Sequence record: LT603033.1
DNA: 64,000 bases
Direction: 5' to 3' (one strand)
The notes under the pieces: generated by a model
Told to the model about the DNA's origin: nothing
Database searches by the model: none
The model's input: only the letters and a program-made list of their open reading frames with translations
Program-made: the position numbers and the translations under genes
Part shown: positions 11,344-36,184 of the stretch, in pieces
How positions within the stretch are numbered: the first letter of the stretch is position 1
Layout: the number at the start of each line of letters is the position of its first letter

Positions 11344-12015
11344 ATGAAACTTAATGCACACAGCAAACAATACCTTAAGCACTTTAAGTACCTCAATAGT
11401 ATTCAGGCAGAATCAGTTACATCTGCATATACGTATCACCCGAATGTACTAAAGAAACGAAATAAAAAGGAAAAATCCAGTACAAATGGAGTTAACGTAT
11501 CAAAGAACCTTGAATTGTACATGAAGAAAAATAATATAGCTGTTCATTATATGAATATCTATAATACTGATTTAAAAGTATTGAGTACTAATACGAGCAC
11601 AAAGGTACTAAAGAACGCATCCTTCATCATCAATATGCAGTTGGATAATACCCCGTGCACTTTAATGCTATACTTCGGGAATACATACTTCTTCGGGAAT
11701 TGTAACACCTCCCACGATGTCAATACAGCACAATTCCAAATGGGTGGCATATACTCTACTGATGCAGAAAAAGTACACGAGAATATGCACTTCTGGCAAG
11801 CACAACGTACAGAAGAAACTGATACAGTACTGCAATTCCTCAAAGAACTAGAACACAAAGAACTACAGGAAGAAGAACTATTCATGTACAGTACTGTAAT
11901 CGATAATCCAGTACTCTATAAAAACGCGTACAATCTGACAAAACATGTACAGGAAATTATCAGTACTAATAAGAAAATGCATCACCTCATTACGTATATT
12001 ACAAACTATGTATAA
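11344..12015 (+). CDS. hypothetical protein carrying the family C motif (EEELFMYSTV)
   Basis: 223 aa; motif near the C-terminus as in the 40.9-64 kb proteins. Confidence 0.8.
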   Translation: MKLNAHSKQYLKHFKYLNSIQAESVTSAYTYHPNVLKKRNKKEKSSTNGVNVSKNLELYMKKNNIAVHYMNIYNTDLKVLSTNTSTKVLKNASFIINMQLDNTPCTLMLYFGNTYFFGNCNTSHDVNTAQFQMGGIYSTDAEKVHENMHFWQAQRTEETDTVLQFLKELEHKELQEEELFMYSTVIDNPVLYKNAYNLTKHVQEIISTNKKMHHLITYITNYV

Positions 12016-12190
12016 AGAATACTACCAAGAACATCTCCCAATGCATCTCCAACACCTTGTACCCAAAGAACCAATAGGAATAAAAGATCACGCAAAAATA
12101 ATGTTCCAACAATGTACTAAGTACACGCTCATATACGATGATAATCCATATATGCTGTACTACGTAGTAATGCTAACATTCAGGTACTAA
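12008..12190 (+). CDS. small hypothetical protein, family A
   Basis: Start trimmed to MYKEYY; ends LTFRY. Confidence 0.8.
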   Translation: MYKEYYQEHLPMHLQHLVPKEPIGIKDHAKIMFQQCTKYTLIYDDNPYMLYYVVMLTFRY

Positions 12191-12191
12191 T

Positions 12192-12371
12192 ATGCACAAA
12201 CATAAAGAATTCTACCTCTCGTACCTTAATTCCGATATAGTAACATCCAATACCTTCAGTACTAAAATTATCTATAATGAATTAATAAAAGAATGTATTA
12301 AAGGTGCTATTAACCCTAAAGATACGTATGACTTGTACTATGCAGTACTAACCCTTGTTTTCACGAAATAA
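12192..12371 (+). CDS. small hypothetical protein, family A
   Basis: 59 aa, not in track; MHKHKEFYL ... YYAVLTLVFTK. Confidence 0.75.
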   Translation: MHKHKEFYLSYLNSDIVTSNTFSTKIIYNELIKECIKGAINPKDTYDLYYAVLTLVFTK

Positions 12372-12379
12372 CACATAAT

Positions 12380-12571
12380 ATGAATAACCACAAAGAATAC
12401 TACATAGAGAAACTCCCAATGTATCTCCAACACCTTGTACCAAACGTTGCATTGGGTATAGAAAAAAACTACGAAAAAGACTACTTCATTCAGTGCACTA
12501 AATCCTCGATATATATTGACGACTATAATCGAGTACTGTATCACATCCTTTTACTAATATATAGGTACTAA
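12380..12571 (+). CDS. small hypothetical protein, family A
   Basis: MNNHKEYY ... LLLIYRY. Confidence 0.8.
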   Translation: MNNHKEYYIEKLPMYLQHLVPNVALGIEKNYEKDYFIQCTKSSIYIDDYNRVLYHILLLIYRY

Positions 12572-12572
12572 T

Positions 12573-12755
12573 ATGCACAAAGAATACTACACACAATTTC
12601 TCCCCAGCATTTTTGAACACTACGCCAGATACAAAGTCCCTATGGATAACGATTTGGCAGTACTGGGATTCAATAACTGCATAGAACGAAGTATAGAAAA
12701 TAGTAGTAGTTATGACCAGCTATATAACACTATCCTACTTATATTCAGGTACTAA
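12573..12755 (+). CDS. small hypothetical protein, family A
   Basis: MHKEYY ... LLIFRY. Confidence 0.8.
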   Translation: MHKEYYTQFLPSIFEHYARYKVPMDNDLAVLGFNNCIERSIENSSSYDQLYNTILLIFRY

Positions 12756-12756
12756 C

Positions 12757-12945
12757 ATGCATAAAGAATACTACACAAAATATTTCCCAATGTACCTCAG
12801 AACTAATCTATTAGATAAACCTCGCGGTATCAATGCACAAAATGATAAAGTGTACTTTACTATGTGCACTAAAGCATGTATACTAGATTTTGACAGCTAT
12901 CATCGAGTACTGTATCATACCCTGTACCTAGCTTTCGTATTCTAA
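12757..12945 (+). CDS. small hypothetical protein, family A
   Basis: Start trimmed to MHKEYY. Confidence 0.8.
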   Translation: MHKEYYTKYFPMYLRTNLLDKPRGINAQNDKVYFTMCTKACILDFDSYHRVLYHTLYLAFVF

Positions 12946-12954
12946 GAGAACAAT

Positions 12955-13140
12955 ATGCATAAAGAATTCTACTTAAGCCATCTCGATCTAAACTCCCAAA
13001 TGCTTATACCACTAATCCCAATAGATATCAAGGATAAGAAAAATACCGAACAATTCATTTACCATACACAGTGTGCGATCACCCCAAATTACATTCCATA
13101 TGAATTGTACTACATTATCGCCCTAATATATAGGTACTAA
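12955..13140 (+). CDS. small hypothetical protein, family A
   Basis: MHKEFY ... ALIYRY. Confidence 0.8.
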   Translation: MHKEFYLSHLDLNSQMLIPLIPIDIKDKKNTEQFIYHTQCAITPNYIPYELYYIIALIYRY

Positions 13141-13141
13141 T

Positions 13142-13327
13142 ATGCATAGAGAATACTACACACAATTTGTTAAAGGGAACTACAAACATGCCGTACCCAG
13201 AACCCCTTTAAATTCTCATGACCCAAGTACTATATTCTTGTTCCATGACGCAATACGTACAGTACTCAATACTAAAGATGAAGATGTGCAGTACGTATTC
13301 TTACTATTACTTATATACAGACACTAA
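13142..13327 (+). CDS. small hypothetical protein, family A
   Basis: MHREYY ... LLIYRH. Confidence 0.8.
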   Translation: MHREYYTQFVKGNYKHAVPRTPLNSHDPSTIFLFHDAIRTVLNTKDEDVQYVFLLLLIYRH

Positions 13328-13332
13328 CTAAT

Positions 13333-13542
13333 ATGAATAAAGAACATAAAGAATTCTACTCCAAATACATAAGCCCCTCAGAACAAATGTTTCTAAGGAC
13401 TACTCCACCTTTAAGTACTAATACATTTTTCGGCAGAGTATGCTACAATAATTGTATTCAAATGACTTTAAACGCAAACGAAGATGGTAACAGTACTAAC
13501 CTGTACTCAGGTATCATAGGTATACTATTCCTGTATGAATAA
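13333..13542 (+). CDS. small hypothetical protein, family A
   Basis: MNKEHKEFY; close paralog of 9957-10166. Confidence 0.8.
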   Translation: MNKEHKEFYSKYISPSEQMFLRTTPPLSTNTFFGRVCYNNCIQMTLNANEDGNSTNLYSGIIGILFLYE

Positions 13543-13723
13543 TTACAAAGACTTCTATTTGAATACACTACCTACTGTACTTTCTCTAAGTGCTCAATGT
13601 AAAATCCCCCTGGATAATGCTTACGCCAGATATAGCTATTCCATAACTGTTAATCGATGTATAGAGAATCATTGCAGTACTAACCAGTACTATAACATAA
13701 TCCTACTTATATTCAGGTACTAA
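13535..13723 (+). CDS. small hypothetical protein, family A
   Basis: MNNYKDFY ... LLIFRY. Confidence 0.8.
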   Translation: MNNYKDFYLNTLPTVLSLSAQCKIPLDNAYARYSYSITVNRCIENHCSTNQYYNIILLIFRY

Positions 13724-13724
13724 T

Positions 13725-13907
13725 ATGAATAAAGAACATAAAGAATTCTATATACGAAAACTAACATTCGTCCCCGTAAGAATATATAAAGAATGCGACC
13801 CAAGATTATACCTATGGCACTTCAATGAGTGCATAAAAGATTCTATATACCCTAAGAACTATAAAGAACAATTGTGCTCAGTACTAACACTAGTACTATC
13901 ATATTAA
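13725..13907 (+). CDS. small hypothetical protein, family A
   Basis: MNKEHKEFY. Confidence 0.8.
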   Translation: MNKEHKEFYIRKLTFVPVRIYKECDPRLYLWHFNECIKDSIYPKNYKEQLCSVLTLVLSY

Positions 13908-13922
13908 TTAATAGAGAATACT

Positions 13923-14123
13923 ATGTATAAAAACTTCTATATAAGTAAACTAAAAGAAAATGAACAAGTATGGATTAGATCTATAATTCCACTGGCATTT
14001 AATAGATATGCATTTAACAGATGTACCGAGATTGCTATAGACCCTTATAATATTAAAGAGAATGTACAGTATAATCAGTATAATCAGTACTACTATATCT
14101 TAATGATTATATATAGGAAGTAA
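13923..14123 (+). CDS. small hypothetical protein, family A
   Basis: MYKNFY ... MIIYRK. Confidence 0.8.
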   Translation: MYKNFYISKLKENEQVWIRSIIPLAFNRYAFNRCTEIAIDPYNIKENVQYNQYNQYYYILMIIYRK

Positions 14124-14314
14124 TATAGCTAGGGGAAGCTCCGTAGTGGAAGCATTATACAGGCTTTAACATATGTTGCATATGTTAAAATTCAGCCTGG
14201 ACAAATGCGATCACTAGGATTCTCCCCAGGCTAAACCCCGTAATCATAGGTAGTCATAAGTAATCATATATAAACATTTATATGAGCACCGTAGAATCAC
14301 AGAATGATTATATA

Positions 14315-14509
14315 TGATTCAGTACTGATTAGTATAGACAAGATTGCTCAAGAATGCACGGAAATGTGTGTGAATGATTCAGTACTGATTAGTATAGACA
14401 AGATTGCTCAAGAATGCACGGAAATGTGTGTGAATGATTCAGTACTGATTAGTATAGACAAGATTGCTCAAGAATGCACGGAAATGTGTGTGAATGATTC
14501 AGTACTGAT
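14315..14509. repeat. 60-bp exact tandem repeat, 3.25 copies
   Basis: Unit TGATTCAGTACTGATTAGTATAGACAAGATTGCTCAAGAATGCACGGAAATGTGTGTGAA at 14315, 14375, 14435 and partial at 14495. Confidence 0.95.
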
Positions 14510-14655
14510 ATGCCACTAAGTAGGCAGAGGAAGTCTGCCGTACTTTGTAGTTTCCAAGCTCCTTTTCCATTTTGCAAATTACATCAAATGTAATCAAAAG
14601 TAATCACGCAATGATTAGTACTGAATTATTACTTTCACCTTAATTACAATTACCC

Positions 14656-14675
14656 TTTTACCCTTCGGGGTAAAA
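14656..14675. terminator. bidirectional hairpin with cUUCGg tetraloop
   Basis: TTTTACCC-TTCG-GGGTAAAA. Confidence 0.6.
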
Positions 14676-14883
14676 TTCAATTACCCCTTGAGGCTCCAGC
14701 AAAAAGTTGGTTAGTACTCCATCCTAAATCTCGATCCTAAAAATTTTGGAGTACCTATGAAATAAAAGTTGGATCTTCGAAAGTTGAAATTTACGTTGGG
14801 ACGTTTATGATTTGTGGGATATAATGATGTTTGTAGTCGGGTAGTTCTCAAGAATATCAGTACTGAATAATGAAAGAAAGCTA

Positions 14884-14911
14884 TTGACATTATGATTCAG
14901 TACTGTATAAT
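14884..14911 (+). promoter_or_regulatory. sigma70 promoter with no downstream ORF
   Basis: TTGACA-16 nt-TATAAT. Confidence 0.75.
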
Positions 14912-14917
14912 GTTCTA

Positions 14918-15215
14918 CATAGCTTCAAGGGGTGATGAGTTGCTGCGAACAATTCATTTACTCTACCTCCTGTCGTGAGACAGTACAGAAAAGATAGTTC
15001 CTCCTGTGGTGGTACATCTTTTTGAACCTCATATGAAAATCGTAATAACAGTACTGATATTAACAGAATGGTGTCAGTACTGATTTTAATCTAAAGCATT
15101 ATACCACCAGCTTGTGCTGGTGGATTCCCTCTAACAGTATTCAGTACTACATGATGGTCTTCATCCTCCTAGGGTAACATAGTGAGGGCTATGATGGCAG
15201 TACTGAATACTCCCT
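14918..15215 (+). ncRNA. candidate structured non-coding RNA
   Basis: Follows the 14884 promoter; successive hairpins CTGTC-GTGA-GACAG, CCACCAGC-TTGT-GCTGGTGG and AGTATTCAGTACT...AGTACTGAATACT; no ORF longer than about 20 codons seen. Confidence 0.4.
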
Positions 15216-15308
15216 TTCAAAAGATAGATCTATGGTATAGTACTGACGGATTTTGGGTGTAGTTACCCTGGATGGATTTTGGGCGTAGATATGTCTAGCC
15301 CTCCAGAA

Positions 15309-15434
15309 GTCTGGAAGTAAAGATGGCTATCCATCTAGACGGCTAAACGGCTAGATTTCTGGATGGCTGGATGGCTAGACGTTTGGACGGCTAAACGGCT
15401 AGATGGTTACACGTCTGGAAGTATAGACGGCTAA
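15309..15434. repeat. short direct-repeat cluster (YGGCTA units)
   Basis: About 8 YGGCT(A) units; GACGGCTAAACGGCTAGAT at 15338 and 15386; GTCTGGAAGTA at 15309 and 15413. Confidence 0.85.
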
Positions 15435-15589
15435 ATCAAAATTTTATTTTGTTTTTCCAATAGTTCCCCTACCGCGTGGGGATAGTTTCCCCGCAGTATC
15501 TGGAGTTAGATTTTTCTGAATCTGGAATCATTATCTTATAAACTGGGGGCAATGTCAACGACCTGGACGGATATTTTTAAAAATTTTTT

Positions 15590-15649
15590 CAGTACTGAAT
15601 TTTGGGCGTAACTATGCACCCGGTGGGCTTGAGTCTTTCTCGACTTGAT
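15590..15649 (-). ncRNA. candidate two-hairpin RNA/leader element, family R1
   Basis: Minus-strand TTGCTT-16-TATAAT promoter, AGTC-GAGAAA-GACT hairpin, AGCCCACCGGGTGC at 15616-15629. Confidence 0.5.
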
Positions 15650-15749
15650 GGAACTATTATACAGTACTGGAAAAATAAAGCAATACCCTGGATGAAAAAA
15701 GTTTTAATTAATTTGCTTGCCATCCTGGGCCGGACTATGGTACTATAAT

Positions 15750-15797
15750 TCAGTACTGAGAAAGTGCGTTAACCTGCTAGGGTGCGGGAGTGTATCC
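15750..15797 (+). ncRNA. candidate R1 element (degenerate)
   Basis: AACCTGCTAGGGTGCGGGAGTGTATC at 15771; tail matches the 17766 copy. Confidence 0.4.
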
Positions 15798-16060
15798 TTT
15801 TTTTATATCTTGAATTTTGGACGGATCTTCCCACCCCCTGGGGTATCCGCTTTCTCGCGTCTATGTAGTAATTATACGCTTTTTCAGGATCAAGTCAATA
15901 CCTAAAAACAAAATAATTGAAAATAATTTAACGCGTTTAAACGGCCCGTAAAGCCCTGGAATGATTGGAATGGTGCAAATGTATAGCTTGGGTGTATTAA
16001 TGCGTTAGAATGCGTCTGAGGCCGTTTTACGGGGTGTAGTAGTGATTTGGTGGATTGATT

Positions 16061-17965: not shown

Positions 17966-18040
17966 ATCAGGACGGGGAACGAAATAAGTAACTCCCCATT
18001 AAGTAGCCCAGGAGTAAGGCACACGAAAAACTCCCCTGAT
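17966..18040 (+). ncRNA. candidate structured RNA, family R2
   Basis: ATCAGG/CCTGAT closing stem, GGGGA/TCCCC and GGAGT/ACTCC hairpins; promoter upstream, next promoter directly downstream. Confidence 0.55.
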
Positions 18041-18108
18041 AAAATAGTTTGAAAATTGTTTTTAAAAGCGTATAATACTTACATCAACTACTGAATGAGG
18101 GTTACAAA

Positions 18109-18720
18109 ATGAAAACTATCACTACTACTACTTTCGTTATGGATTTTTCTGAATTGAACGCAGAACAAAAAACGTCAGCTATCGAACTGGTTCGGGAACG
18201 TGAAAAAAACTCAAACGACAATTATTTTTCTGAAAGTGAAATTGAATACTATAAAGAAACAGTACTACCGGAATATGGCATTAATGACGCTGAAATACAA
18301 TTCAGTGGTTTTTGGTCCCAGGGTGACGGTGCATCAATCAGTACTGACCACGTTGACGCAGTGAAGTTTTTACGCAAGGTAAGAGCATTAACTAAGTATC
18401 GCTCAATCCGTCACCTGCTGAATGAAGATGATTTGGCGATGAGTGTAAAGCGTTCTCACTCTCACTACTCGCATGAGAACACTGTAAGCGGGTACATTGA
18501 ATCGGCTTACACTGATTTAACCGCAAAACAAGAAACGTTAGTTAATGAGCTTGAGGAACTACTCACTGAAACTATTCGTGAATTGTCACGCAAGTTGTAC
18601 CGTGATTTAGAGAATGCATATGAGGATCAATTCACTACTGAAAACATCGTAGCACTGATTGAGGGTAACGAGTATCAATTCAATGTTATTGATGGCGTAG
18701 TAGAATCAATCGAATATTAA
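18109..18720 (+). CDS. acidic phage protein with FSGFWSQGDGAS motif
   Basis: 203 aa; motif recalled from a phage family often auto-annotated as antitoxin; function unverified. Confidence 0.7.
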   Translation: MKTITTTTFVMDFSELNAEQKTSAIELVREREKNSNDNYFSESEIEYYKETVLPEYGINDAEIQFSGFWSQGDGASISTDHVDAVKFLRKVRALTKYRSIRHLLNEDDLAMSVKRSHSHYSHENTVSGYIESAYTDLTAKQETLVNELEELLTETIRELSRKLYRDLENAYEDQFTTENIVALIEGNEYQFNVIDGVVESIEY

Positions 18721-18812
18721 TTCAAAAAGTACTGGACACTAAGCAATAAAGGCGTATAATACTTTATATCGAGAGCGGGAATAGTTCCCGCTACTAATGA
18801 GGAATACTACAA

Positions 18813-18977
18813 ATGAATACTTTTACCTTCGCTCAATTGAACGCCCTGGATGTATTGTCTGATGCTTTGCGGGATGCAACTGAAAGCGGTTTATTTGACA
18901 ATGTTGACATTCACCCTGATGTAATTAATAATTTTTGTGATGCTATCGCAGAAGTACTGGAAGATCTAAAAAAATAA
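18813..18977 (+). CDS. small acidic hypothetical protein (54 aa)
   Basis: GAGGA RBS, own promoter and hairpin; not in track. Confidence 0.65.
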   Translation: MNTFTFAQLNALDVLSDALRDATESGLFDNVDIHPDVINNFCDAIAEVLEDLKK

Positions 18978-18987
18978 TAGAAAGTAC

Positions 18988-19015
18988 TTGCAATTAGTTT
19001 TTAGTACTGTATAAT
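18988..19015 (+). promoter_or_regulatory. early sigma70 promoter
   Basis: TTGCAA-16-TATAAT with AGTACT in the spacer. Confidence 0.8.
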
Positions 19016-19065
19016 AGTTTACATAGAGGGGAGAAATGGTTCTCCCTGGTAATGAGGAAAATAAA

Positions 19066-19287
19066 ATGGCTAATATCACTACTCTTTCTCAACTGGAAGC
19101 ACTGGTTAAATCTATGCGGGAACATGCAGACAATATCGGCGTAAAAGATCCAGCCGTTTGCTTCTGCGACGAAATGAATGATGATACACTGGTAATAGCA
19201 GAAGTACAAGATATTTCTAACTATTCATCGCGTTACACTGGCGGCGTAGCAAATAAAGGTGACTTCTGTTTATACCTTACCAAATAA
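19066..19287 (+). CDS. hypothetical early protein
   Basis: Start trimmed to MANITTL; GAGGA RBS. Confidence 0.75.
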   Translation: MANITTLSQLEALVKSMREHADNIGVKDPAVCFCDEMNDDTLVIAEVQDISNYSSRYTGGVANKGDFCLYLTK

Positions 19288-19334
19288 CAACGCGGGGAGA
19301 TAATAACTCCCCGTTACTTTTTCAGTACTGAATC

Positions 19335-19387
19335 ATTTAATAGACGGATCTCGGCACCCTGTGGGTTAGTGACTGTATCGTCTTTAT
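19335..19387 (-). ncRNA. candidate R1 element (antisense)
   Basis: Minus-strand TTGACA-17-CATAAT; GAC-GATACA-GTC hairpin; AACCCACAGGGTGC at 19354-19367. Confidence 0.5.
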
Positions 19388-19529
19388 GTAGTAATTATGC
19401 CAGTACTGGATGCACTTGTCAACAACTATTTTTCAAATACTTTTTATTAAAATACTTGCTAATAGTTTTTAAACGCGTATAATGTTTTGCATAGGGGAGC
19501 GGTTCCCCTGGTAACTAAGGAATAAGAAA

Positions 19530-19766
19530 ATGCTTGAACAAATCAAATCAACGTCTGCTAATGTAACGGGAACGGTATCACACTTTATTGGTGATGAATC
19601 GCGGGGCGTTCCCTATTGTGCTGTACATGTAAACACTGAGGGTAACTACTGGTTTACGGTTTACGGATCATATTCATTTGGACGGCCAGGGCATCAAAAA
19701 ATTCTGGATAAAGTACAACCAACGGGTAAAAATATCACTGCCGAAATGTTTTATAAAAAATCATAA
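19530..19766 (+). CDS. hypothetical early protein
   Basis: AAGGA RBS, promoter, hairpin. Confidence 0.75.
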   Translation: MLEQIKSTSANVTGTVSHFIGDESRGVPYCAVHVNTEGNYWFTVYGSYSFGRPGHQKILDKVQPTGKNITAEMFYKKS

Positions 19767-19850
19767 AGTACTTGATAATAGTTTTTAGTACTGTACAATA
19801 TTTTACATCGCACGGGGGAGCGGTTCCCCCTGGTAACTAAGGATAATCAA

Positions 19851-20150
19851 ATGAAAATTGCAATCATCGCCCTGGCTTTATCTGTTTCCTCTTTCGCTGT
19901 TAACGCGTCGTTAGATGTACCTAGTGAAAAATTCATTCAGTGTACTGTTGCGATGACAGATGAAAGTACTGGCGAGATTGTTTTAAAGGATTTAGAGATC
20001 CAGTCAGAAGCATTTAAAAGCGGCCCGTTCCATGAAGAAGACGAAAAAGGTAGCACGACAATTTATTACGATGTAAGTACTAAGCGTGGATCGGTCACGG
20101 TTATGGATACTGAGAAAGTAACGCACACCGGAGTAATTAACTGTTTATAA
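19851..20150 (+). CDS. putative exported protein
   Basis: Sec-type signal MKIAIIALALSVSSFAVNA; acidic mature part with 2 Cys. Confidence 0.7.
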   Translation: MKIAIIALALSVSSFAVNASLDVPSEKFIQCTVAMTDESTGEIVLKDLEIQSEAFKSGPFHEEDEKGSTTIYYDVSTKRGSVTVMDTEKVTHTGVINCL

Positions 20151-20167
20151 TATAGTACTGAATCACT

Positions 20168-20195
20168 AGCCCACCTTAAACAGTGGGCTTTTTTG
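20168..20195 (+). terminator. Rho-independent terminator
   Basis: AGCCCAC-CTTAAACA-GTGGGCT-TTTTT; identical copy at about 20894. Confidence 0.8.
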
Positions 20196-20273
20196 TTTTG
20201 TAGTACTGCATACTTTAAAAATAGTTTTAAAAAAGTAGTTGACATTACCACAAAAAGGCGTAGAATGTATTAC

Positions 20274-20335
20274 ATCAAGACGGGGAGCACTAAGTAGACC
20301 GCCAGTAAGTCGAACGAAAAACTGGACACGTCGAT
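20274..20335 (+). ncRNA. candidate R2 structured RNA (short variant)
   Basis: Same TAAGTAG linker and 14-nt AAGNCRNANGAAAA loop, closed by CCAGT/ACTGG; promoter TTGACA-16-TAGAAT at 20239-20266. Confidence 0.45.
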
Positions 20336-20389
20336 AAAACTTTGATACACTAATAAACGTAAACTAAACTTTAATTGAGGATTTATAAA

Positions 20390-20872
20390 ATGGCTAATGT
20401 AAAATCATTCCTGAAAGCACTGATTTCAAACGATACTGTTATTGCTGCTGAATTGCTGGCTGAACTGGATAACGATACAATGAAAGCGGTACGCAACAAT
20501 TTTAACATTGCGTACAGTGAAGCTAAAGAACTGCAAGCCAAAAAGGTAGCAGAACTGGAAGAACAGAAAAAAGCCCGTGAAGCAGAACTACAAGCAACAA
20601 TTGAAAGTATTCAGGCGGCAGTGTCTGGATTGGATCTGGAAGTGGTTGTAGAAATGGCACATAAAGCCCTGGCGGTTAAGTACGGTGAAGATAAGCCGGA
20701 ATCTAAACCTAAAAAATGGATTCAAGAACGTGTTACTGTAGTACTTGATAACGGTGAAGAACATTTGATTCCTGTACGCGGTAACTGCATTGCGGTAGTA
20801 CTGGACGCTATCAAAGAAAGCGGTATGACTCGCGAGGAATGGATCGAAGCTCATCGCAAAGTTGAAGCATAA
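20390..20872 (+). CDS. H-NS-like nucleoid protein
   Basis: Coiled-coil N-half; C-terminus VVLDNGEEHLIPVRGNCIAVVLDAIKESGMTREEWI aligns by eye with E. coli H-NS [36 protein letters not shown]. Confidence 0.6.
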   Translation: MANVKSFLKALISNDTVIAAELLAELDNDTMKAVRNNFNIAYSEAKELQAKKVAELEEQKKAREAELQATIESIQAAVSGLDLEVVVEMAHKALAVKYGEDKPESKPKKWIQERVTVVLDNGEEHLIPVRGNCIAVVLDAIKESGMTREEWIEAHRKVEA

Positions 20873-20893
20873 CAATTAAAGTACTGAATCAAT

Positions 20894-20920
20894 AGCCCAC
20901 CTTAAACAGTGGGCTTTTTT
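20894..20920 (+). terminator. Rho-independent terminator
   Basis: AGCCCAC-CTTAAACA-GTGGGCT-TTTTT. Confidence 0.8.
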
Positions 20921-21156
20921 GTGTCTATAGTATTCCAGTCCACTAGCACCGCCTAGAATCGATTCTAACGCATTAAACTGATTATCTGATACATCGCCCT
21001 AGCTGGTGGCGTTAAGGTCGTTAGAAAGCGATTGAGAGTGTTTAAAGTATTTTGCAAAAAGTAATAAAAAGTACTTGCATGATTAAGAGATTAGCGTATA
21101 ATGTTTTACATCGAAAGGGGAAACGGTTCTCCTTCCAAATCAAAGGAATCAAAACA

Positions 21157-21384
21157 ATGGCTATTATCATTACTCGCGTATCTGGTACTACTGGCAATTC
21201 TTCTACTGTTGCAGTCATTACTAACAAGGCAGGTGCGGAATTGCAAAATGCAATGAATACCTGGGCCGTTAATGAGTTCGGTCAGTGGGCAAGTGTAGCA
21301 TACATTGAAACCTATCAAGTGCCGACCATTAGTTTAACGGATCTTGGTGTGGAACGTATCCTTTGCTTGGATGAATTAAATTAA
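21157..21384 (+). CDS. hypothetical early protein
   Basis: Start trimmed to MAIIITR; AAGGA RBS. Confidence 0.75.
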   Translation: MAIIITRVSGTTGNSSTVAVITNKAGAELQNAMNTWAVNEFGQWASVAYIETYQVPTISLTDLGVERILCLDELN

Positions 21385-21469
21385 AAAAGTACTTGCAAAG
21401 TAAATCGAATAAAGTATAATACATTACATCAAGGGGAGAAATGATTCTCCCCACTACAAGGAAACTAAT

Positions 21470-21613
21470 ATGAAAACTTGTCAATGTGGTAAAAAATCTA
21501 TTACTGGTTTAAAGCGGGGCGTTGCTCTTTGCCAGTACCATTATAATTTACAAGTATGGGGTAAAGAATGGGCCGACCAGGTGGAAGCAATTAAGAAAGC
21601 AAAAAGTAAGTAA
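21470..21613 (+). CDS. small Cys/His (putative Zn-binding) protein, 47 aa
   Basis: CQC...CQYH; own promoter TTGCAA-16-TATAAT at 21393-21420. Confidence 0.6.
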   Translation: MKTCQCGKKSITGLKRGVALCQYHYNLQVWGKEWADQVEAIKKAKSK

Positions 21614-21702
21614 AAATATTATCACAGTACTATTGACATAGTTTGATAGTACTGGCATAATAGATTTTATCAAGACAACATATTAATTTAAGGAATACTA
21701 AA

Positions 21703-22026
21703 ATGGCTAAAACTATCATTAACACCGTTTCCCTGGCTGCAATCCGTGCAATCAATGTTGACGGTAAACGTTGGACTGATTCATATGGCAATACTTATCA
21801 TTCTTGTCATGTAAGCGTCGAACTGGATAACGGTTTGAATGTTCTGGCGGTTGAATCATTTACTTATGGCTATGAAGATGCATATCAACAAACGGCGTTA
21901 GATCTATTAAAGGAATCAGTAGACGGGCTTAATACTGATGAAACCTCCCTTACTCGTTTGTGCAATGATCTTAATATCCCGTTGCATTGTACTGTACAGA
22001 ATGTTAAACGCAAAAAAGATCTTTAA
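21703..22026 (+). CDS. hypothetical early protein, paralog of 28137-28460
   Basis: Shared RWTDSxGNTYHSC and FTYGY motifs, ends VKRKKD. Confidence 0.8.
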   Translation: MAKTIINTVSLAAIRAINVDGKRWTDSYGNTYHSCHVSVELDNGLNVLAVESFTYGYEDAYQQTALDLLKESVDGLNTDETSLTRLCNDLNIPLHCTVQNVKRKKDL

Positions 22027-22106
22027 TTAGCTTTACTTTATGCAGATACTTTGATATAGTGTCTGCATAGGGGAAAGAAATTAAATTAACTTAAGAGGAT
22101 CGTATA

Positions 22107-22376
22107 ATGAAAAATATCAGTACTTTAATCGATGCAGGTACACATGTTCGGCGGTCTATGGTTGCAACCAGTACTACAAAACAAGTAGCAAGCGGTTATC
22201 TTGTATTTGTGCACGATGGTAAACTCCTGGAACGTTCAATCAATTTTGATGTTAAAAACAATTGCCGTTTTATTATCTTTAAGCGTGAACAATATAAAAT
22301 TGATTTGCCAGCGAAGCCCATTAGCGGGGCGTACAACGTGCAATCATTGTTTGAGCGTCAACCATACACCTATTGA
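22107..22376 (+). CDS. hypothetical early protein
   Basis: GAGGA RBS. Confidence 0.7.
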   Translation: MKNISTLIDAGTHVRRSMVATSTTKQVASGYLVFVHDGKLLERSINFDVKNNCRFIIFKREQYKIDLPAKPISGAYNVQSLFERQPYTY

Positions 22377-22427
22377 TCAAATCATCGTTAGTGGTCGATT
22401 TAGGCCGCTTATATTGGGGATTATACC

Positions 22428-22700
22428 ATGAACGTTAATCAAGTACTAAATGAAGTTGAAAGCATCATTAAACCAATGAAACGTATTGATGCAATGCTAA
22501 CACCGGAAGAATGCCGCCTTTATGAGCGTTACAGCGTCGAACAAGTCCAGGCGATGGCTATGGCTACCCCTGCCGTTAAACAGCCTGAGAATGCGTTACA
22601 GGACGTTACAGGGGATTATATCATTAATCCAGTACTAGGGAAGATTACACCAATCACCGAAGAAGAAAAAGACTACTTAAGCCAGTACTTAAAAGGTTAA
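22428..22700 (+). CDS. hypothetical protein
   Basis: GGGGA RBS. Confidence 0.65.
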   Translation: MNVNQVLNEVESIIKPMKRIDAMLTPEECRLYERYSVEQVQAMAMATPAVKQPENALQDVTGDYIINPVLGKITPITEEEKDYLSQYLKG

Positions 22701-22705
22701 TTAAT

Positions 22706-22915
22706 ATGCTTACTGTACAGGATAAGATCGACATCTTAAAGGTTAATATGTATGTGATTGATGCAGATCCTGAAAAAGTATTTGCATACGATGATTCTAA
22801 TCGTAGTCCTTTTTATTGTAGTCATGTAGTTGGATACGTGCCGTTAGCGTATGTTATCGAAAGAGTGGTTGATTCAGCATACAAACATTTTTTAGAAAAT
22901 AATACTTGCAATTAG
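22706..22915 (+). CDS. hypothetical protein
   Basis: Follows the previous gene closely. Confidence 0.65.
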   Translation: MLTVQDKIDILKVNMYVIDADPEKVFAYDDSNRSPFYCSHVVGYVPLAYVIERVVDSAYKHFLENNTCN

Positions 22916-22984
22916 TTTTTAGTACTGTATAATAGTTTACATGAAGTGGAGAAATAGTTCTCCCCACTAATTAAGGAATATGAA

Positions 22985-23131
22985 ATGAAAGCATCAAAAA
23001 AGAGTACTAATAAGAAAGCACGTTCAACTTTAGATGGGGTATTCCCTTTGCGTTTTGTGGATGAAGTGGTTTCCTACCCGCTGGGGCTTACTCCTGAGAT
23101 GGTAGAAAGTTTACGTAAATCTAAAAAATAA
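22985..23131 (+). CDS. small basic hypothetical protein (48 aa)
   Basis: Own promoter, hairpin and AAGGA RBS. Confidence 0.55.
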   Translation: MKASKKSTNKKARSTLDGVFPLRFVDEVVSYPLGLTPEMVESLRKSKK

Positions 23132-23212
23132 TACTTGCAATTAGTTTTTAGTACTGTATAATAGTTTACATGAAGGGGAGAAATGATTCTCCCCAAGAAC
23201 AGGAGAAATAAA

Positions 23213-23365
23213 ATGAAACAATATAATGCTCGGTTTGATGTTACTATCGGTAACGGTAAAGGTCAATTTTCTTTCAGTACTCGACGCAGTTATACAGAAA
23301 ACTTCCTGCGTAATTGTGCACTGACCGCCGCTCAAATTAAACATTATTTTCAGGCTAAAAAATGA
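23213..23365 (+). CDS. small hypothetical protein
   Basis: Start trimmed to MKQYNARF; AGGAG RBS. Confidence 0.65.
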   Translation: MKQYNARFDVTIGNGKGQFSFSTRRSYTENFLRNCALTAAQIKHYFQAKK

Positions 23366-23451
23366 AATCATTAGCTTATTACAGTTCGGCCCTGGTCGTT
23401 GCATTGATCGCGGCGTTGTTAGTAACCTATCTATTCTTTATGGTGATTTAA
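23362..23451 (+). CDS. small membrane peptide (29 aa)
   Basis: ATGA overlap; SSALVVALIAALLVTYLFFMVI. Confidence 0.45.
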   Translation: MKSLAYYSSALVVALIAALLVTYLFFMVI

Positions 23452-23589
23452 ATGAATCCTAACGGTATAATTTACAGTACTCCTAAAACGAAAGCAGACA
23501 AGGTAAACGCTAAAAAAGCGAAAGTAAAGGAGTACATCAAGCAAGGCATGACGCGAAAGGCGGCGATTCTAAAAGCTAAAAATAAATGA
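23452..23589 (+). CDS. small Lys-rich protein (45 aa)
   Basis: Adjacent to the upstream stop; KTKADKVNAKKAKVKEYIKQG. Confidence 0.5.
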   Translation: MNPNGIIYSTPKTKADKVNAKKAKVKEYIKQGMTRKAAILKAKNK

Positions 23590-34066: not shown

Positions 34067-34257
34067 TGCGTAAAGGGATCTAGTACTGATTCAGAAAAAA
34101 GTCAAGGCGTTTTTAAAATTATGCGTTAAAAAAATGCATAGGTAATCCCTTGACTTTTTTGAAATAAAAGGGATTGGACTATGGCAAAATGCGTAGGGGG
34201 CTAAAGGGCGGGTAACCTTAGCGACTTCGATAAAGGGGTATTACGAATAAAATGTTA

Positions 34258-34285
34258 TTGACTTTTTATATGAATCGTATAAAAT
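34258..34285 (+). promoter_or_regulatory. sigma70 promoter for the family B operon
   Basis: TTGACT-16-TAAAAT. Confidence 0.6.
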
Positions 34286-34315
34286 ATGATTGATATTAAT
34301 TTTAAGGGAGTCCCT

Positions 34316-34513
34316 ATGCGTATTTTAACTAAAGAACAGCACCACGAAAGACTTATCAATAACATGGCTATGATAATGTATAAGTCCCATGACCGTGGTA
34401 TTGCCTATAAGCGTGAATTAATTATGGCACTATTCATTGGAACTAACTTTCAGGAAAGGTATGTCAACGATTGGATTTGGTATTTAATTGAAGATATAAC
34501 GAGTAAACTATGA
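34316..34513 (+). CDS. family B protein
   Basis: GTNFQE. Confidence 0.8.
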   Translation: MRILTKEQHHERLINNMAMIMYKSHDRGIAYKRELIMALFIGTNFQERYVNDWIWYLIEDITSKL

Positions 34514-34710
34514 AAATGCGTATTTTAAATAAAGAAGAATATCAATCACTGTTACGTAAAAACTACGTAAAGATTTACAACACAGACACACATGTAGAAC
34601 GAATGGAGTTATACCTTTTGATTACATTGGGAACAAACTATCAGGGTAGATGGGTGTGGCAATATATGGATACATTGAAAAATAAAATATTGTCCACGAG
34701 GAAACAATGA
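34510..34710 (+). CDS. family B protein
   Basis: GTNYQG. Confidence 0.8.
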   Translation: MKMRILNKEEYQSLLRKNYVKIYNTDTHVERMELYLLITLGTNYQGRWVWQYMDTLKNKILSTRKQ

Positions 34711-34916
34711 AAACTATAACACGAACCCAATCATACGGTCTTATCTTGAAATACATGGACTTAATGGTGGATATCAGCAAAGACCTGCCTAAAACTGAAA
34801 TTGAAGTTGCAAGAGCAGAGATCCGCATGTTGGCTGTACTGAACACAAACCATCAGGAAGATTATGTTGAAGAATGGATTCGATTTTTAATAGAAGATAT
34901 TAAGAGTAAAATATGA
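34707..34916 (+). CDS. family B protein
   Basis: NTNHQE. Confidence 0.8.
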   Translation: MKTITRTQSYGLILKYMDLMVDISKDLPKTEIEVARAEIRMLAVLNTNHQEDYVEEWIRFLIEDIKSKI

Positions 34917-35128
34917 TTATTATAGAAAACTCATATCAATATACTGAACGCATCGCTGCCAGACAACTTGAAATCCTCATAATATACGAAGAGACGTCTG
35001 ATTTAAACTTAGCCGAGGTATTGGAAAATGAAATACTTTTGGGTGCATTCTTGGGAACAGACTATCAGGAGTATTATGAGGAAAAGTATTTGTCATCTCT
35101 TGAGAAATACATCAGGAGCAAATTATGA
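34913..35128 (+). CDS. family B protein
   Basis: GTDYQE. Confidence 0.8.
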   Translation: MIIIENSYQYTERIAARQLEILIIYEETSDLNLAEVLENEILLGAFLGTDYQEYYEEKYLSSLEKYIRSKL

Positions 35129-35337
35129 TTATATTAACACCTGAAGAATATAAGAAACGTTTTAATTCTGTCCAGACTGAAATATTACTTATATACCTTT
35201 CAAATGCAGACCTTAACTTATCAAGGGCAATGGAGAAGGATTTACTTATGGGTGCATTTTTGGATACAGACTTTCAGGAGTATTATGTAGGGAAATACTT
35301 AATTGAACTTCAGAACTACATTAAGAGTAAACTATGA
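35125..35337 (+). CDS. family B protein
   Basis: DTDFQE. Confidence 0.8.
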   Translation: MIILTPEEYKKRFNSVQTEILLIYLSNADLNLSRAMEKDLLMGAFLDTDFQEYYVGKYLIELQNYIKSKL

Positions 35338-35561
35338 AACATTTAAGTAATATTGAGAAGATGAGAATTATCATTGATGCATTAAACAAATACGATACCC
35401 TTTTACAAATAAAAGGTTTAACTCGATTGGAACACAAGATAAACACCACCGATGTACGCATGTTGGCTGTACTGGGGACGAACTTCCAGGAAGAGTATGT
35501 TATTGCACACATAGTTGCACTCAAGAATTACATTATGGACAAATGTAATGAACATCATTAA
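35334..35561 (+). CDS. family B protein
   Basis: GTNFQE. Confidence 0.8.
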   Translation: MKHLSNIEKMRIIIDALNKYDTLLQIKGLTRLEHKINTTDVRMLAVLGTNFQEEYVIAHIVALKNYIMDKCNEHH

Positions 35562-35772
35562 TAACTTTGAATACGAGGCCCGTGCTAAGAGTGCCAGAAA
35601 AAAAGAGAACACCATTTACTTCACTATGATGTACTTACAATGGACTGAAATTGAAGAAAAGGTTGCTGAAGTATGGATGTTGGAATTCATGGGGACGCAG
35701 TATCAGAATAGGTTTGCGGGTGAGTATATCGATGTTCTTATGAAACAAATAGAAAGAAAGGAAAAGAACTAA
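35548..35772 (+). CDS. family B protein
   Basis: GTQYQN. Confidence 0.8.
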   Translation: MNIINNFEYEARAKSARKKENTIYFTMMYLQWTEIEEKVAEVWMLEFMGTQYQNRFAGEYIDVLMKQIERKEKN

Positions 35773-35930
35773 TGGTTTTCATTAACATATCTGACCAACT
35801 CGATACTAAACTAGAAGTCGAGCAGAGTGAGGGATGGATGCTGTACTTTCTTGGAACTTCTCATCAAAATTTTTATATCCATGAACACATAGTTGCACTC
35901 ACAAATCTAATAAGGGATAAATGTAAATGA
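35772..35930 (+). CDS. family B protein (short, 52 aa)
   Basis: GTSHQN; TAATG overlap; not in track. Confidence 0.7.
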   Translation: MVFINISDQLDTKLEVEQSEGWMLYFLGTSHQNFYIHEHIVALTNLIRDKCK

Positions 35931-36184
35931 AACACTTGACGGACGATGAATATTCACTTAGAATTCGAAAGCTCACCCCAGAAGCAAGAGTAATCTACGA
36001 TGACGATGCACTTTCATGGAACGAGATGAAAGTTAAAGTTCATGAGCTATGGTTGCTGTACTTTGTGGGAACCCAATATCAAGAGAAATATTGTACCGAT
36101 TATCTTGAACAACTAATGGATTTTATACAGATAAAACTAAATGAACGAATTGTGGAAAAATATGAAAACTTTATCAAGCACTGA
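35927..36184 (+). CDS. family B protein
   Basis: GTQYQE. Confidence 0.8.
   Translation: MKHLTDDEYSLRIRKLTPEARVIYDDDALSWNEMKVKVHELWLLYFVGTQYQEKYCTDYLEQLMDFIQIKLNERIVEKYENFIKH

What the first reader, a model, noticed from the sequence alone, without database searches (positions are those of the whole stretch)
20390..20872. H-NS-like protein with a rewritten DNA-binding loop
Seen: coiled-coil N-half, K/P linker, and a C-terminal domain that aligns with H-NS on both sides of the recognition loop. The AT-hook-like TWTGQGR is replaced by LIPVRGN. Known: H-NS silences AT-rich foreign DNA, and phages counter it with T7 gp5.5, T4 Arn and MotB, or truncated H-NS homologues. Inference: a dominant-negative anti-silencer for this AT-rich genome, or a re-specified nucleoid protein. 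Speculatively it could be the AGTACT reader.
Basis: partly seen in the sequence, partly recalled or inferred. Interest (0 to 1): 0.7.

Follow-up and report, generated by a model that had tools for sequence, protein, structure and literature searches.

The report
Jumbo-phage H-NS-like nucleoid protein
An early gene of a 348-kb E. coli jumbo phage encodes a very diverged relative of the bacterial DNA-coating silencer H-NS whose DNA-contact loop reads R-G-N instead of Q-G-R; it probably lets the phage compete with or disturb host silencing of its AT-rich DNA, but no function has been tested.

Summary
The ORF at 20390-20872 (+) is real: 160 aa, with a Shine-Dalgarno sequence, a near-consensus sigma-70 promoter and its own terminator. 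The window is Escherichia phage vB_Eco_slurp01 (121Q/PBECO4 group). The H-NS resemblance holds. Profile-profile comparison with H-NS/StpA gives 90% probability and is collinear over 89 columns. A model of the C-terminal domain finds H-NS, MvaT and Ler domains first in three structure libraries. Annotators of Klebsiella phage Muenster recorded an HHpred hit to StpA for the orthologue. No curated family HMM detects the protein.

The loop is modified rather than rewritten. G131-N132 are the only invariant residues in 20 homologues. They align with G113-R114 of H-NS, and Asn is what MvaT places in the minor groove. Unlike H-NS, the linker plus C-terminal domain is acidic (net -3 against +5).

The family occurs only in RaK2-like enterobacterial jumbo phages, always a few kb from the left genome end. 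Best reading: an immediate-early, self-assembling H-NS-type protein that acts on AT-rich DNA. The dominant-negative model could not be tested.

The AGTACT idea is not excluded. The palindrome is 5-20-fold over-represented in every sampled genome that carries the gene and depleted in three relatives that lack it. That amounts to a single phylogenetic contrast.

The parts
20239..20266 (+). sigma-70-type promoter-like site, TTGACA-16 nt-TAGAAT (11 of 12), 123 nt upstream of the ATG
   Evidence: Equivalent near-consensus sites lie 50-60 nt upstream of the orthologues in phages Muenster, Munch and GAP32. Function is inferred, not shown.
20377..20381 (+). Shine-Dalgarno GAGGA, 8 nt before the start codon
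   Evidence: read directly from the sequence
20390..20872 (+). CDS of the 160-aa H-NS-like protein (P0001), stop codon included
   Evidence: phrog_27871, E 2e-91, unknown function. Full-length orthologues in 51 phage records.
20390..20680 (+). N-terminal helical domain, aa 1-97: two short helices, a 50-residue helix, a turn and a fourth helix (the H-NS alpha1-alpha4 pattern)
   Evidence: Only the end of the long helix and the turn align with H-NS site 2. H-NS topology from PMC6936261.
20627..20641 (+). G80-L-D-L-E84 turn between the long helix and helix 4. It is the best conserved element of the N-terminal domain and aligns with H-NS G69-I-D-P
20681..20728 (+). linker, aa 98-113, K/P-rich but net charge 0 (counted from the translation), low model confidence
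20729..20869 (+). C-terminal H-NS/MvaT-type domain, aa 114-160: beta hairpin, loop, two helices
20777..20785 (+). codons of R130-G131-N132, the presumed minor-groove loop. G131 and N132 are invariant in the family
   Evidence: MvaT G99-N100 from PMC4466236.
20894..20921 (+). intrinsic-terminator-like hairpin plus T run, 22 nt after the stop codon
20152..20207 (+). upstream copy of a ~55-bp direct repeat (AGTACTG, identical hairpin, T run, TAGTAC) that ends the preceding gene
20878..20934 (+). downstream copy of the same ~55-bp terminator module. With the upstream copy it brackets the promoter-gene unit

Best explanation
The gene encodes a phage-borne, full-length H-NS-type nucleoid-associated protein. 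It has an H-NS-like N-terminal oligomerisation domain, a flexible linker, and a C-terminal domain with the H-NS/MvaT fold. The loop between strand 2 and helix 1 carries R-G-N where H-NS has Q-G-R. The gene is an independent sigma-70-driven transcription unit a few kb from the left genome end, inside the terminal repeat where that is mapped, so host RNA polymerase should make it immediately after DNA entry. Inferred mechanism: the protein self-assembles through its own N-domain and places the Gly-Asn loop tip in the minor groove of AT-rich DNA. The 34.5% G+C phage genome is the obvious substrate. There it would occupy or disturb the sites host H-NS would otherwise coat, as the anti-silencer Ler does, and/or organise the phage's early region. 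Shown: gene structure, family distribution, remote homology, predicted fold, conservation pattern. Inferred: DNA binding, oligomerisation, timing, biological role. My sub-probabilities: evolutionary and structural relative of H-NS/MvaT about 0.85; binds DNA through the GN loop about 0.6; main role is interference with host H-NS on phage DNA about 0.4.
For: Homology: hhalign of 20 family members against 12 H-NS/StpA sequences gives 90.1% probability, E 1.6e-6, 89 collinear columns (P0001 61-154 vs H-NS 48-136). Both domains score above swapped-domain controls. The Muenster orthologue is annotated 'HHpred hit to NP_417155.1 97.2%', and NP_417155.1 is StpA. Fold: the C-domain-only model (pLDDT 79) has Salmonella H-NS C-domain 2L93 as first Foldseek hit among 350,542 PDB chains, with Ler at rank 10 and 1HNR at rank 19. 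Its first VIA-align hit among 48,161 chains is the MvaT-DNA complex 2MXF (Z 3.3, 44 of 47 residues), and only 6 chains reach Z>=2. The second-look alignment lists MvaT 2MXE (Z 3.2), Ler (Z 2.3) and one unrelated chain (Z 2.0) as the only ones with Z>=2. The three best ESM Atlas shape matches are all H-NS clusters, best TM 0.61 over 50 residues at rmsd 1.8 A. Language-model features also point to H-NS clusters (score 0.76, a lead only). Loop: G131 and N132 are the only invariant residues apart from Met1; R114, G122, G145, R148 and I152 are >=90% conserved. In MvaT, Gly99-Asn100 enter the minor groove and Asn100 takes the place of H-NS Arg114 (PMC4466236). Expression unit. Sigma-70-like promoters mark the early small-ORF and terminal-repeat region in the related phage CBB (PMC5259590). 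Position in terminal repeats. Against a pure host-H-NS poison: the phage proteins are 21-40% identical between genera, while the H-NS of Salmonella, Klebsiella, Yersinia and Erwinia is 85-93% identical to that of E. coli.
Against: No curated sequence model detects the protein. NCBIfam gives only noise, no Pfam domain is on record for any homologue, and HMM searches of PDB sequences find no significant H-NS hit. All structural scores are individually weak, as expected for a ~47-residue domain, and rest on predicted models built from only 20 sequences. Linker plus C-domain is acidic (net -3, pI 5.3), against +5/+6 (pI ~10) in H-NS/StpA, and the family ranges from -4 to +4. Basic linker residues matter for H-NS DNA binding (PMC6936261), so strong non-specific DNA binding is doubtful. 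The first ~55 residues show no detectable similarity to H-NS site 1, and the full-length model found no H-NS N-domain in the PDB. There are no expression or binding data; metatranscriptome contigs were uninformative.
Confidence: 0.6

Rival explanations
1. Dominant-negative poison of host H-NS/StpA. The phage protein co-polymerises with host H-NS, most plausibly through the site-2-like helix-turn-helix. Because its linker and C-domain are acidic, it breaks or weakens silencing filaments on the incoming AT-rich genome.
For: The only N-domain segment that aligns with H-NS is the site-2 region (GLDLE against GIDP), and this turn is the best conserved N-domain element in the family. Linker plus C-domain has net charge -3 against +5 in H-NS. 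An immediate-early promoter fits a counter-silencing role.
Against: [quoted passage not shown] There is no detectable similarity to H-NS site 1.
Confidence: 0.2
2. Xenogeneic-silencer reinforcement or host shut-off. The protein behaves as an extra H-NS that keeps AT-rich host islands, including defence loci, repressed during infection, as was proposed for the H-NS of phage EPV1.
For: It has a full-length H-NS-type architecture and an early expression unit. There is a precedent hypothesis for a phage-encoded H-NS (review PMC7074111).
Against: The acidic linker and C-domain make it a poor general silencer. The phage genome is far more AT-rich than the host's and would titrate the protein. No data bear on this directly.
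Confidence: 0.1
3. Sequence-directed reader of the AGTACT / CAGTACTG palindrome that marks this phage clade's DNA. It would bind phage DNA selectively, for example to tell self from host DNA or to time the shut-off of the motif-dense early region.
For: AGTACT occurs 266 times in the window against 19.5 expected. It extends to CAGTACTG with AT-rich flanks, occurs in all three codon phases, and is 2.8-fold denser between genes. It is enriched 5.5-20-fold in every sampled genome or contig that carries the gene (slurp01/121Q, RaK2, K64-1, Muenster, GAP32, CBB, Munch, metagenomic contigs). It is depleted (0-0.3-fold) in PA5oct, Atu_ph07 and XacN1, where the family profile finds no homologue. Density is about three times higher in the left-terminal 20 kb, where the gene lies, than in the mid-genome. 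The weak net charge would fit a protein that relies on specific contacts. MvaT-type GN loops tolerate G:C pairs and favour TpA steps (PMC4466236).
Against: All carriers probably form one clade, so this is a single evolutionary contrast shared with hundreds of other clade-specific genes. H-NS-fold domains read minor-groove shape with low sequence specificity. The residue before GN varies (R, K, N, S, T, H) among phages that share the same motif. There are no binding data.
Confidence: 0.08
4. Chance resemblance: a coiled-coil phage protein with an unrelated small alpha/beta domain and no kinship or functional analogy to H-NS.
For: No family HMM hit. Every structural score is below conventional significance (Foldseek E 0.6; Z 3.3). 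A weak PHROG hit to head scaffolding proteins (E 0.003) shows how coiled coils attract spurious matches.
Against: Four independent methods rank H-NS-family domains first out of libraries of tens of thousands to hundreds of thousands of entries. The match is collinear across two domains in the right order, and swapped-domain controls fail. An independent HHpred result exists for the orthologue.
Confidence: 0.07

Closest known systems
H-NS / StpA of Enterobacteriaceae (Pfam PF22470 + PF00816)
   Same: Same order of parts. N-domain: two short helices, a long helix, a turn and a fourth helix. Then a flexible linker and a C-domain with a beta hairpin, loop and two helices. The loop has the same length, so the alignment runs without a gap from the NGE turn to the end of the alignment (N121-G-E = N103-G-E, G131 = G113).
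   Different: 27% identity at best, and only over the C-terminal half. Not found by the family HMMs. Q-G-R is R-G-N. The linker is net 0 by residue count instead of strongly basic, and linker plus C-domain is -3 against +5. Site 1 is unrecognisable in sequence. It is encoded by a lytic jumbo phage.
MvaT / TurB of Pseudomonas (C-domain structures 2MXE, 2MXF)
   Same: Best structural match of the C-domain model (Z 3.2-3.3, 44-45 of 47 residues). A Gly-Asn dipeptide sits at the loop tip; in MvaT this enters the minor groove and Asn100 stands in for H-NS Arg114. The model has a beta bridge after helix 2, as MvaT has a strand beta3.
   Different: [quoted passage not shown] MvaT lacks alpha1/alpha2 and uses a plain coiled coil at site 1, whereas the phage model has the two short helices. 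The MvaT lysine network and Arg80 arm have no clear counterparts in slurp01.
Ler of the LEE pathogenicity island (2LEV)
   Same: An H-NS-type C-domain on a diverged N-terminal coiled coil. It is a structural hit for the phage C-domain (Z 2.3; Foldseek rank 10). Ler works as an anti-silencer that competes with H-NS on AT-rich DNA (from my own knowledge of the literature), which is the mode I favour here.
   Different: From memory, not checked here, Ler keeps an Arg at the position of H-NS R114. It is chromosomal and island-encoded and regulates specific operons.
Mobile-element H-NS homologues: phage EPV1 H-NS, plasmid Sfh, H-NS(R27), Acr2, Hfp (review PMC7074111)
   Same: Full-length silencer homologues carried by mobile DNA and thought to manage the encounter between AT-rich incoming DNA and the host silencer.
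   Different: Those are recognisable H-NS proteins by sequence, and Sfh and H-NS(R27) have conserved charge distribution. tblastn with E. coli H-NS finds no phage genome in 50,697 'phages' records; the single hit is a bacterial contig, so the slurp01 family is far more diverged. None of them has the GN loop as far as I know.
Phage anti-H-NS proteins T7 gp5.5, T4 Arn and MotB, LUZ24 Mip
   Different: They are unrelated in fold to H-NS (a binder of the oligomerisation region, a DNA mimic, a DNA binder). No similarity to them was tested or seen here.

Membership tests
H-NS family (Pfam PF00816 Histone_HNS, PF22470 Histone_HNS_N) | Scores with the curated sequence models of the family | tested here: not met
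   NCBIfam gives only two noise hits at E 0.08-0.14. None of the 22 homologues has a Pfam domain on record, while nearly all of the 120 listed H-NS proteins carry both PF00816 and PF22470 and the rest PF22470 alone. phmmer and hmmsearch against PDB sequences find no significant H-NS hit; the best is 3NR7 at E 0.78.
H-NS family (Pfam PF00816 Histone_HNS, PF22470 Histone_HNS_N) | Remote homology at profile-profile level, collinear over the oligomerisation and DNA-binding regions | tested here: met
   hhalign gives 90.1% probability, E 1.6e-6, 89 columns. C-domain alone E 3.5e-5; N-domain alone E 0.0024; swapped controls E 0.2-0.3. HHpred 97.2% to StpA is recorded for the Muenster orthologue.
H-NS family (Pfam PF00816 Histone_HNS, PF22470 Histone_HNS_N) | C-terminal domain fold: beta hairpin, recognition loop, two short helices | tested here: met
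   Model secondary structure. First hits are 2L93 H-NS (Foldseek), 2MXF/2MXE MvaT and 2LEV Ler (VIA-align) and H-NS clusters of the ESM Atlas (TM 0.61). All of this rests on predicted models.
H-NS family (Pfam PF00816 Histone_HNS, PF22470 Histone_HNS_N) | N-terminal domain with alpha1-alpha2-long alpha3-turn-alpha4, giving two dimerisation sites | tested here: inconclusive
   The predicted helices 7-12, 16-23, 28-77 and 83-97 fit the pattern described for H-NS 1-83, and the site-2 turn aligns. Site 1 has no sequence match, and the monomer model finds only generic long-helix proteins in the PDB.
H-NS family (Pfam PF00816 Histone_HNS, PF22470 Histone_HNS_N) | Basic flexible linker that recruits the protein to DNA | tested here: not met
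   The linker is flexible (pLDDT about 60) but has net charge 0 by residue count from the translation. Linker plus C-domain is -3 (pI 5.3), against +5 and +6 (pI ~10) for H-NS and StpA.
H-NS family (Pfam PF00816 Histone_HNS, PF22470 Histone_HNS_N) | AT-hook-like Q/R-G-R motif in the loop | tested here: not met
   The aligned residues are R130-G131-N132. Gly is invariant, the last Arg is replaced by an invariant Asn, and the first position varies (R, K, N, S, T, H) in the family.
H-NS family (Pfam PF00816 Histone_HNS, PF22470 Histone_HNS_N) | Binds AT-rich DNA, oligomerises along it and silences transcription | not testable with these tools
   Needs EMSA, ChIP and reporter assays.
MvaT family | Gly-Asn at the tip of loop 2 that enters the minor groove | tested here: met
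   G131-N132 are invariant in 20 sequences. The role of G99-N100 in MvaT is from PMC4466236. Only sequence and position are shown here, not binding.
MvaT family | Loop 2 two residues shorter than in H-NS; Arg80 arm and lysine network complete the 'AT-pincer' | tested here: not met
   The alignment with H-NS has no gap through the loop. R114 (>=90% conserved) starts strand 1 rather than preceding it. slurp01 has few lysines in and after the loop.
MvaT family | N-domain without alpha1/alpha2 (plain coiled-coil site 1) | tested here: not met
   The model has two short helices before the long helix. MvaT/TurB topology is from PMC6936261.
Truncated H-NS antagonists (H-NST type) | N-terminal oligomerisation part only, no DNA-binding domain | tested here: not met
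   A complete, conserved C-domain is present in all 20 aligned homologues.

The most novel reading that the evidence does not exclude
In this reading an H-NS-fold domain with a Gly-Asn loop and little net charge has been re-specified from shape readout of AT-rich DNA to recognition of a phage-specific mark, giving the phage a private chromatin protein that distinguishes its own DNA from the host's.
Probability: 0.08. Interest if true: 0.85.

Novelty: new variant of a known kind. Interest (0 to 1): 0.55.

Why it matters
H-NS-type silencers are the main host barrier to expression of AT-rich incoming DNA. The known phage answers are inhibitors unrelated to H-NS.

This is a conserved family of full-length H-NS-like proteins in lytic enterobacterial jumbo phages. 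It is made from a host-type promoter near the genome end. Its recognition loop combines H-NS loop length with the Asn of MvaT, and it lacks the basic charge thought necessary for H-NS binding.

If it binds DNA, it widens the known sequence solutions for minor-groove readout by this fold. If it does not, it is a natural decoy. Either result bears on how 350-kb AT-rich genomes escape silencing.

The co-occurrence with an extreme, unexplained palindrome bias offers a directly testable link between a DNA mark and a candidate reader. In the slurp01 record (and in all but two of the records listed) the protein is annotated as hypothetical, and I found no paper that discusses it.

Tried and rejected
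1. Complex prediction with P0001 1-100 and E. coli H-NS 1-85 gave no answer: score 0.00, controls not run. It is not evidence either way.

2. Fold searches with the full-length model were dominated by the 50-residue helix and returned only generic coiled-coil or long-helix proteins (Foldseek, VIA-align). They became informative only after folding the C-domain alone.

3. Sequence and HMM searches of PDB chains with the protein, with the 5- and 20-sequence alignments and with the C-domain alignment found no significant H-NS hit. The best hit of the 20-sequence profile was the defence protein Ec2ApeA (E 0.021, residues 249-337). I treat it as noise because Gly131 of the invariant Gly-Asn pair is not matched, and I did not follow it up.

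4. The PHROG hit to head scaffolding protein (E 0.003) is coiled-coil noise.

5. The search for related loci with the 20-sequence alignment failed for lack of a conserved stretch. With 7 sequences it returned only 121Q and RaK2.

6. Wastewater metatranscriptome runs hold fragments of this early region. They are short contigs from mixed relatives that cover the neighbours as well, so they show neither transcription nor transcript ends.

7. Literature searches for AGTACT or CAGTACTG in phages, and for H-NS together with any RaK2-group phage name, found nothing relevant. The jumbo-phage survey PMC7824862 does not mention H-NS.

8. The main text of the phAPEC6 virion proteome paper does not mention the orthologue gp528; I did not check its supplement.

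9. Contigs carrying distant homologues were mostly too short to inform. The three long ones show the same layout of small, unannotated, same-strand ORFs.
Full report
**What is there**

The window is Escherichia phage vB_Eco_slurp01. Window 19800-21400 matches LT603033.1 81800-83400 at 100% identity. This is a 348-kb jumbo myovirus of the 121Q/PBECO4 group (Asteriusvirus). The flagged interval is an ORF from ATG 20390 to TAA 20872 encoding 160 aa.

- GAGGA lies 8 nt before the start codon.
- A promoter-like site TTGACA-16-TAGAAT (11 of 12) lies at 20239-20266, and a hairpin plus T run at 20894-20921.
- The protein belongs to phrog_27871, of unknown function (E 2e-91).
- tblastn finds full-length copies in 51 phage records (Escherichia, Klebsiella, Salmonella), nearly all annotated as hypothetical.

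**Is it H-NS-like?**

Direct searches say nothing. NCBIfam gives only noise. No Pfam domain is on record for any homologue. phmmer and hmmsearch against PDB sequences find no significant H-NS hit.

I collected a family of 20 sequences, 23-88% identical to the query, with an exhaustive profile search of 1.8 billion representatives. I compared this family with 12 H-NS/StpA sequences:

- hhalign gives 90.1% probability, E 1.6e-6, over 89 collinear columns, P0001 61-154 against H-NS 48-136.
- Split by domain, C-domain vs C-domain scores E 3.5e-5 and N-domain vs N-domain scores E 0.0024 (site-2 region only).
- The two swapped-domain controls score E 0.2-0.3.

Independently, the GenBank record of Klebsiella phage Muenster annotates its orthologue as 'putative DNA-binding protein, HHpred hit to NP_417155.1 97.2%'. 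NP_417155.1 is StpA. RefSeq calls the K64-1 orthologue 'DNA-binding protein'.

**Structure**

The AlphaFold2 model built on the family alignment (pLDDT 83.7) shows:

- helices 7-12, 16-23, 28-77 and 83-97;
- a low-confidence linker;
- strands 114-118 and 124-128;
- a loop at 129-134;
- helices 135-144 and 148-155.

This matches the published H-NS layout: alpha1-alpha2 and part of alpha3 form site 1, alpha3-turn-alpha4 forms site 2, followed by a linker and the C-domain (PMC6936261).

Searches with the whole model were swamped by the long helix. A model of residues 100-160 alone (pLDDT 79) gave these results:

| Search | Library | Result |
|---|---|---|
| Foldseek | 350,542 PDB chains | First hit 2L93, H-NS C-domain (E 0.6, TM 0.41/0.47); Ler 2LEV at rank 10; 1HNR at rank 19 |
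| VIA-align, wide | 48,161 chains | First hit 2MXF, MvaT C-domain with DNA (Z 3.3, rmsd 2.9 A, 44 of 47 residues); Ler fourth; only six chains at Z>=2 |
| VIA-align, second look | 926 chains | Three chains at Z>=2: MvaT 2MXE (Z 3.2), Ler (Z 2.3) and one unrelated TCP domain (Z 2.0) |
| ESM Atlas, by shape | cluster representatives | Rows 1-3 are all H-NS clusters; best TM 0.61, 50 residues, rmsd 1.8 A |
| ESM Atlas, by features | named clusters | Nearest named clusters are H-NS (score 0.76, a lead only) |

Each score is weak, as it must be for a 47-residue domain. The same family coming first in every library is not plausibly chance. I put kinship with the H-NS/MvaT domain at about 0.85.

**The loop**

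Across the 20 sequences the only invariant residues besides Met1 are G131 and N132. R114, G122, G145, R148 and I152 are at least 90% conserved.

The alignment with H-NS is ungapped from N121-G-E (= N103-G-E) to the end of the alignment. This gives R130 = Q112, G131 = G113 and N132 = R114. The H-NS 'Q/R-G-R' therefore reads 'R-G-N' here. The first position varies in the family (R, K, N, S, T, H).

In MvaT, loop 2 (KGGNH) inserts Gly99-Asn100 into the minor groove. Asn100 adopts the conformation of the last Arg of Q/RGR, and N100A weakens binding and abolishes repression (PMC4466236). The phage loop therefore combines H-NS loop length with the MvaT residue. 'Rewritten' overstates this: the two residues that do the work in MvaT are the ones under the strongest constraint here. 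This is my main reason to think the domain still contacts DNA.

**What does not fit H-NS**

- The linker (98-113) has net charge 0 by residue count from the translation. Linker plus C-domain is -3 (pI 5.3), against +5 and +6 (pI ~10) for H-NS and StpA. The family ranges from -4 to +4.
- Basic linker residues help recruit H-NS to DNA, so strong non-specific binding is doubtful.
- The first ~55 residues have no detectable similarity to H-NS site 1.
- The most conserved N-domain element is the G-L-D-L-E turn, which aligns with G-I-D-P of H-NS site 2.

**Distribution and context**

The family is found in:

- Asteriusvirus (E. coli);
- Alcyoneusvirus (RaK2, K64-1, Muenster);
- Mimasvirus (GAP32, CBB);
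- Salmonella phages such as Munch;
- a Yersinia phage protein in BFVD;
- metagenomic contigs with the same layout of small, unannotated, same-strand ORFs.

The family profile finds nothing in PA5oct or Atu_ph07, and only noise (E 0.86) in XacN1.

The gene lies 2-7 kb from the left end of the genome: 5709 in Muenster (inside the mapped terminal repeat), 3783 in Munch, 4751 in GAP32, and 1959 plus a second copy at 357882 in CBB's 22.5-kb repeat. In several E. coli phage records it appears twice for the same reason.

Near-consensus sigma-70 promoters and private terminators flank the orthologues in Muenster, Munch and GAP32. In the related phage CBB, such promoters mark the presumed early host-takeover region and the terminal repeat (PMC5259590).

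Synteny extends upstream. The ORF at 18109-18720 is 43% identical to the gene that sits in the same relative position in Muenster.

**Mechanism**

I favour an immediate-early, self-assembling H-NS-type protein that contacts the minor groove with the Gly-Asn loop and acts mainly on the 34.5% G+C phage DNA. There it would compete with or disturb host H-NS, as Ler does.

Against the pure dominant-negative model:

- The C-domain and its loop are conserved.
- The N-domains are only 21-40% identical between phage genera, although the H-NS of related enterobacteria is 85-93% identical to that of E. coli.

The model is not excluded, because the site-2 turn is conserved and H-NS-like and the C-terminal half is acidic. 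The only heteromer prediction gave no verdict.

**The AGTACT idea**

- AGTACT occurs 266 times in the window against 19.5 expected.
- It extends to CAGTACTG with AT-rich flanks, occurs in all codon phases, and is 2.8 times denser between genes.
- It is enriched 5.5-20-fold in every sampled genome or contig that carries the gene, and about three times more in the left-terminal 20 kb than in the mid-genome.
- It is depleted (0-0.3-fold) in PA5oct, Atu_ph07 and XacN1, which lack the gene.

The association is perfect but probably reflects one clade, so it is a single contrast shared with many other clade-specific genes.

**Novelty**

Phage- and plasmid-borne H-NS homologues are known (EPV1, Sfh and others; PMC7074111), but those are ordinary H-NS proteins by sequence. 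tblastn with E. coli H-NS finds no phage genome in the 50,697-record 'phages' collection; its single hit is a bacterial contig.

No paper in the searchable library connects H-NS with this phage group. The only prior recognition is the annotation note in Muenster and K64-1.

Because three defining H-NS features fail (family HMM, basic linker, Q/RGR), I file this as a new variant of the H-NS-like kind rather than as a member of the family.

Noticed in passing
whole window (e.g. 20154, 20202, 20740, 20797, 20880); also L001, L002, L005-L013, L022-L024, L033-L034, L039-L040: The palindrome AGTACT occurs 266 times against ~20 expected. The extended consensus is CAGTACTG (54 copies) with AT-rich flanks. 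It occurs in all three codon phases, at 8.9 per kb between genes and 3.2 per kb inside them. The bias is shared by RaK2, K64-1, Muenster, GAP32, CBB, Munch and metagenomic relatives, and is strongest in their left-terminal early regions. It is absent (depleted) in PA5oct, Atu_ph07 and XacN1. I found no explanation in the literature I could search.
   Followed up: partly
window 20152-20207 and 20878-20934: A ~55-bp direct repeat brackets the promoter-gene unit. Each copy has AGTACTG, an identical 22-nt terminator hairpin (AGCCCACCTTAAACAGTGGGCT), a T run, and then TAGTAC (first copy) or TAGTAT (second copy). These are the only two copies of the hairpin in the window. This could be a reused terminator module or the trace of a cassette.
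   Followed up: partly
window 34088-39459 and 44001-48000: These stretches are almost free of AGTACT (none between 34088 and 39459; none in the 44-48 kb bin) inside an otherwise saturated window. They coincide with lower G+C (0.31-0.33).
   Followed up: no
window ~12000-16000: The GC skew changes sign here (negative up to ~16 kb, positive after). In related contigs the H-NS-like gene lies a few kb into a rightward array of small ORFs that diverges from leftward RCC1/WD40-repeat genes (L011, L013). The same divergent layout probably holds here.
   Followed up: no
window 18109-18720 (+): This 203-aa ORF (phrog_5162, unknown function) is 43% identical to Muenster CPT_Muenster_006, which is annotated 'YeeU-like antitoxin'. 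It sits at the same distance upstream of the H-NS-like gene, so synteny is conserved between Asteriusvirus and Alcyoneusvirus.
   Followed up: partly
window 18000-23500: Four wastewater metatranscriptome runs of one study hold short contigs (150-430 nt, 85-100% identical) scattered over the whole early region, from several related phages. This shows such phages in wastewater RNA libraries, but not that the gene is transcribed.
   Followed up: partly
L006/L007/L008/L011 and L025 3104-3364: In Munch and several metagenomic relatives a small DksA/TraR-type zinc-finger gene follows one or a few genes downstream of the H-NS-like gene. In the window, the 47-aa ORF at 21470-21613 has a C-x-C ... C-x2-H pattern and may be a counterpart. 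I did not test this.
   Followed up: no
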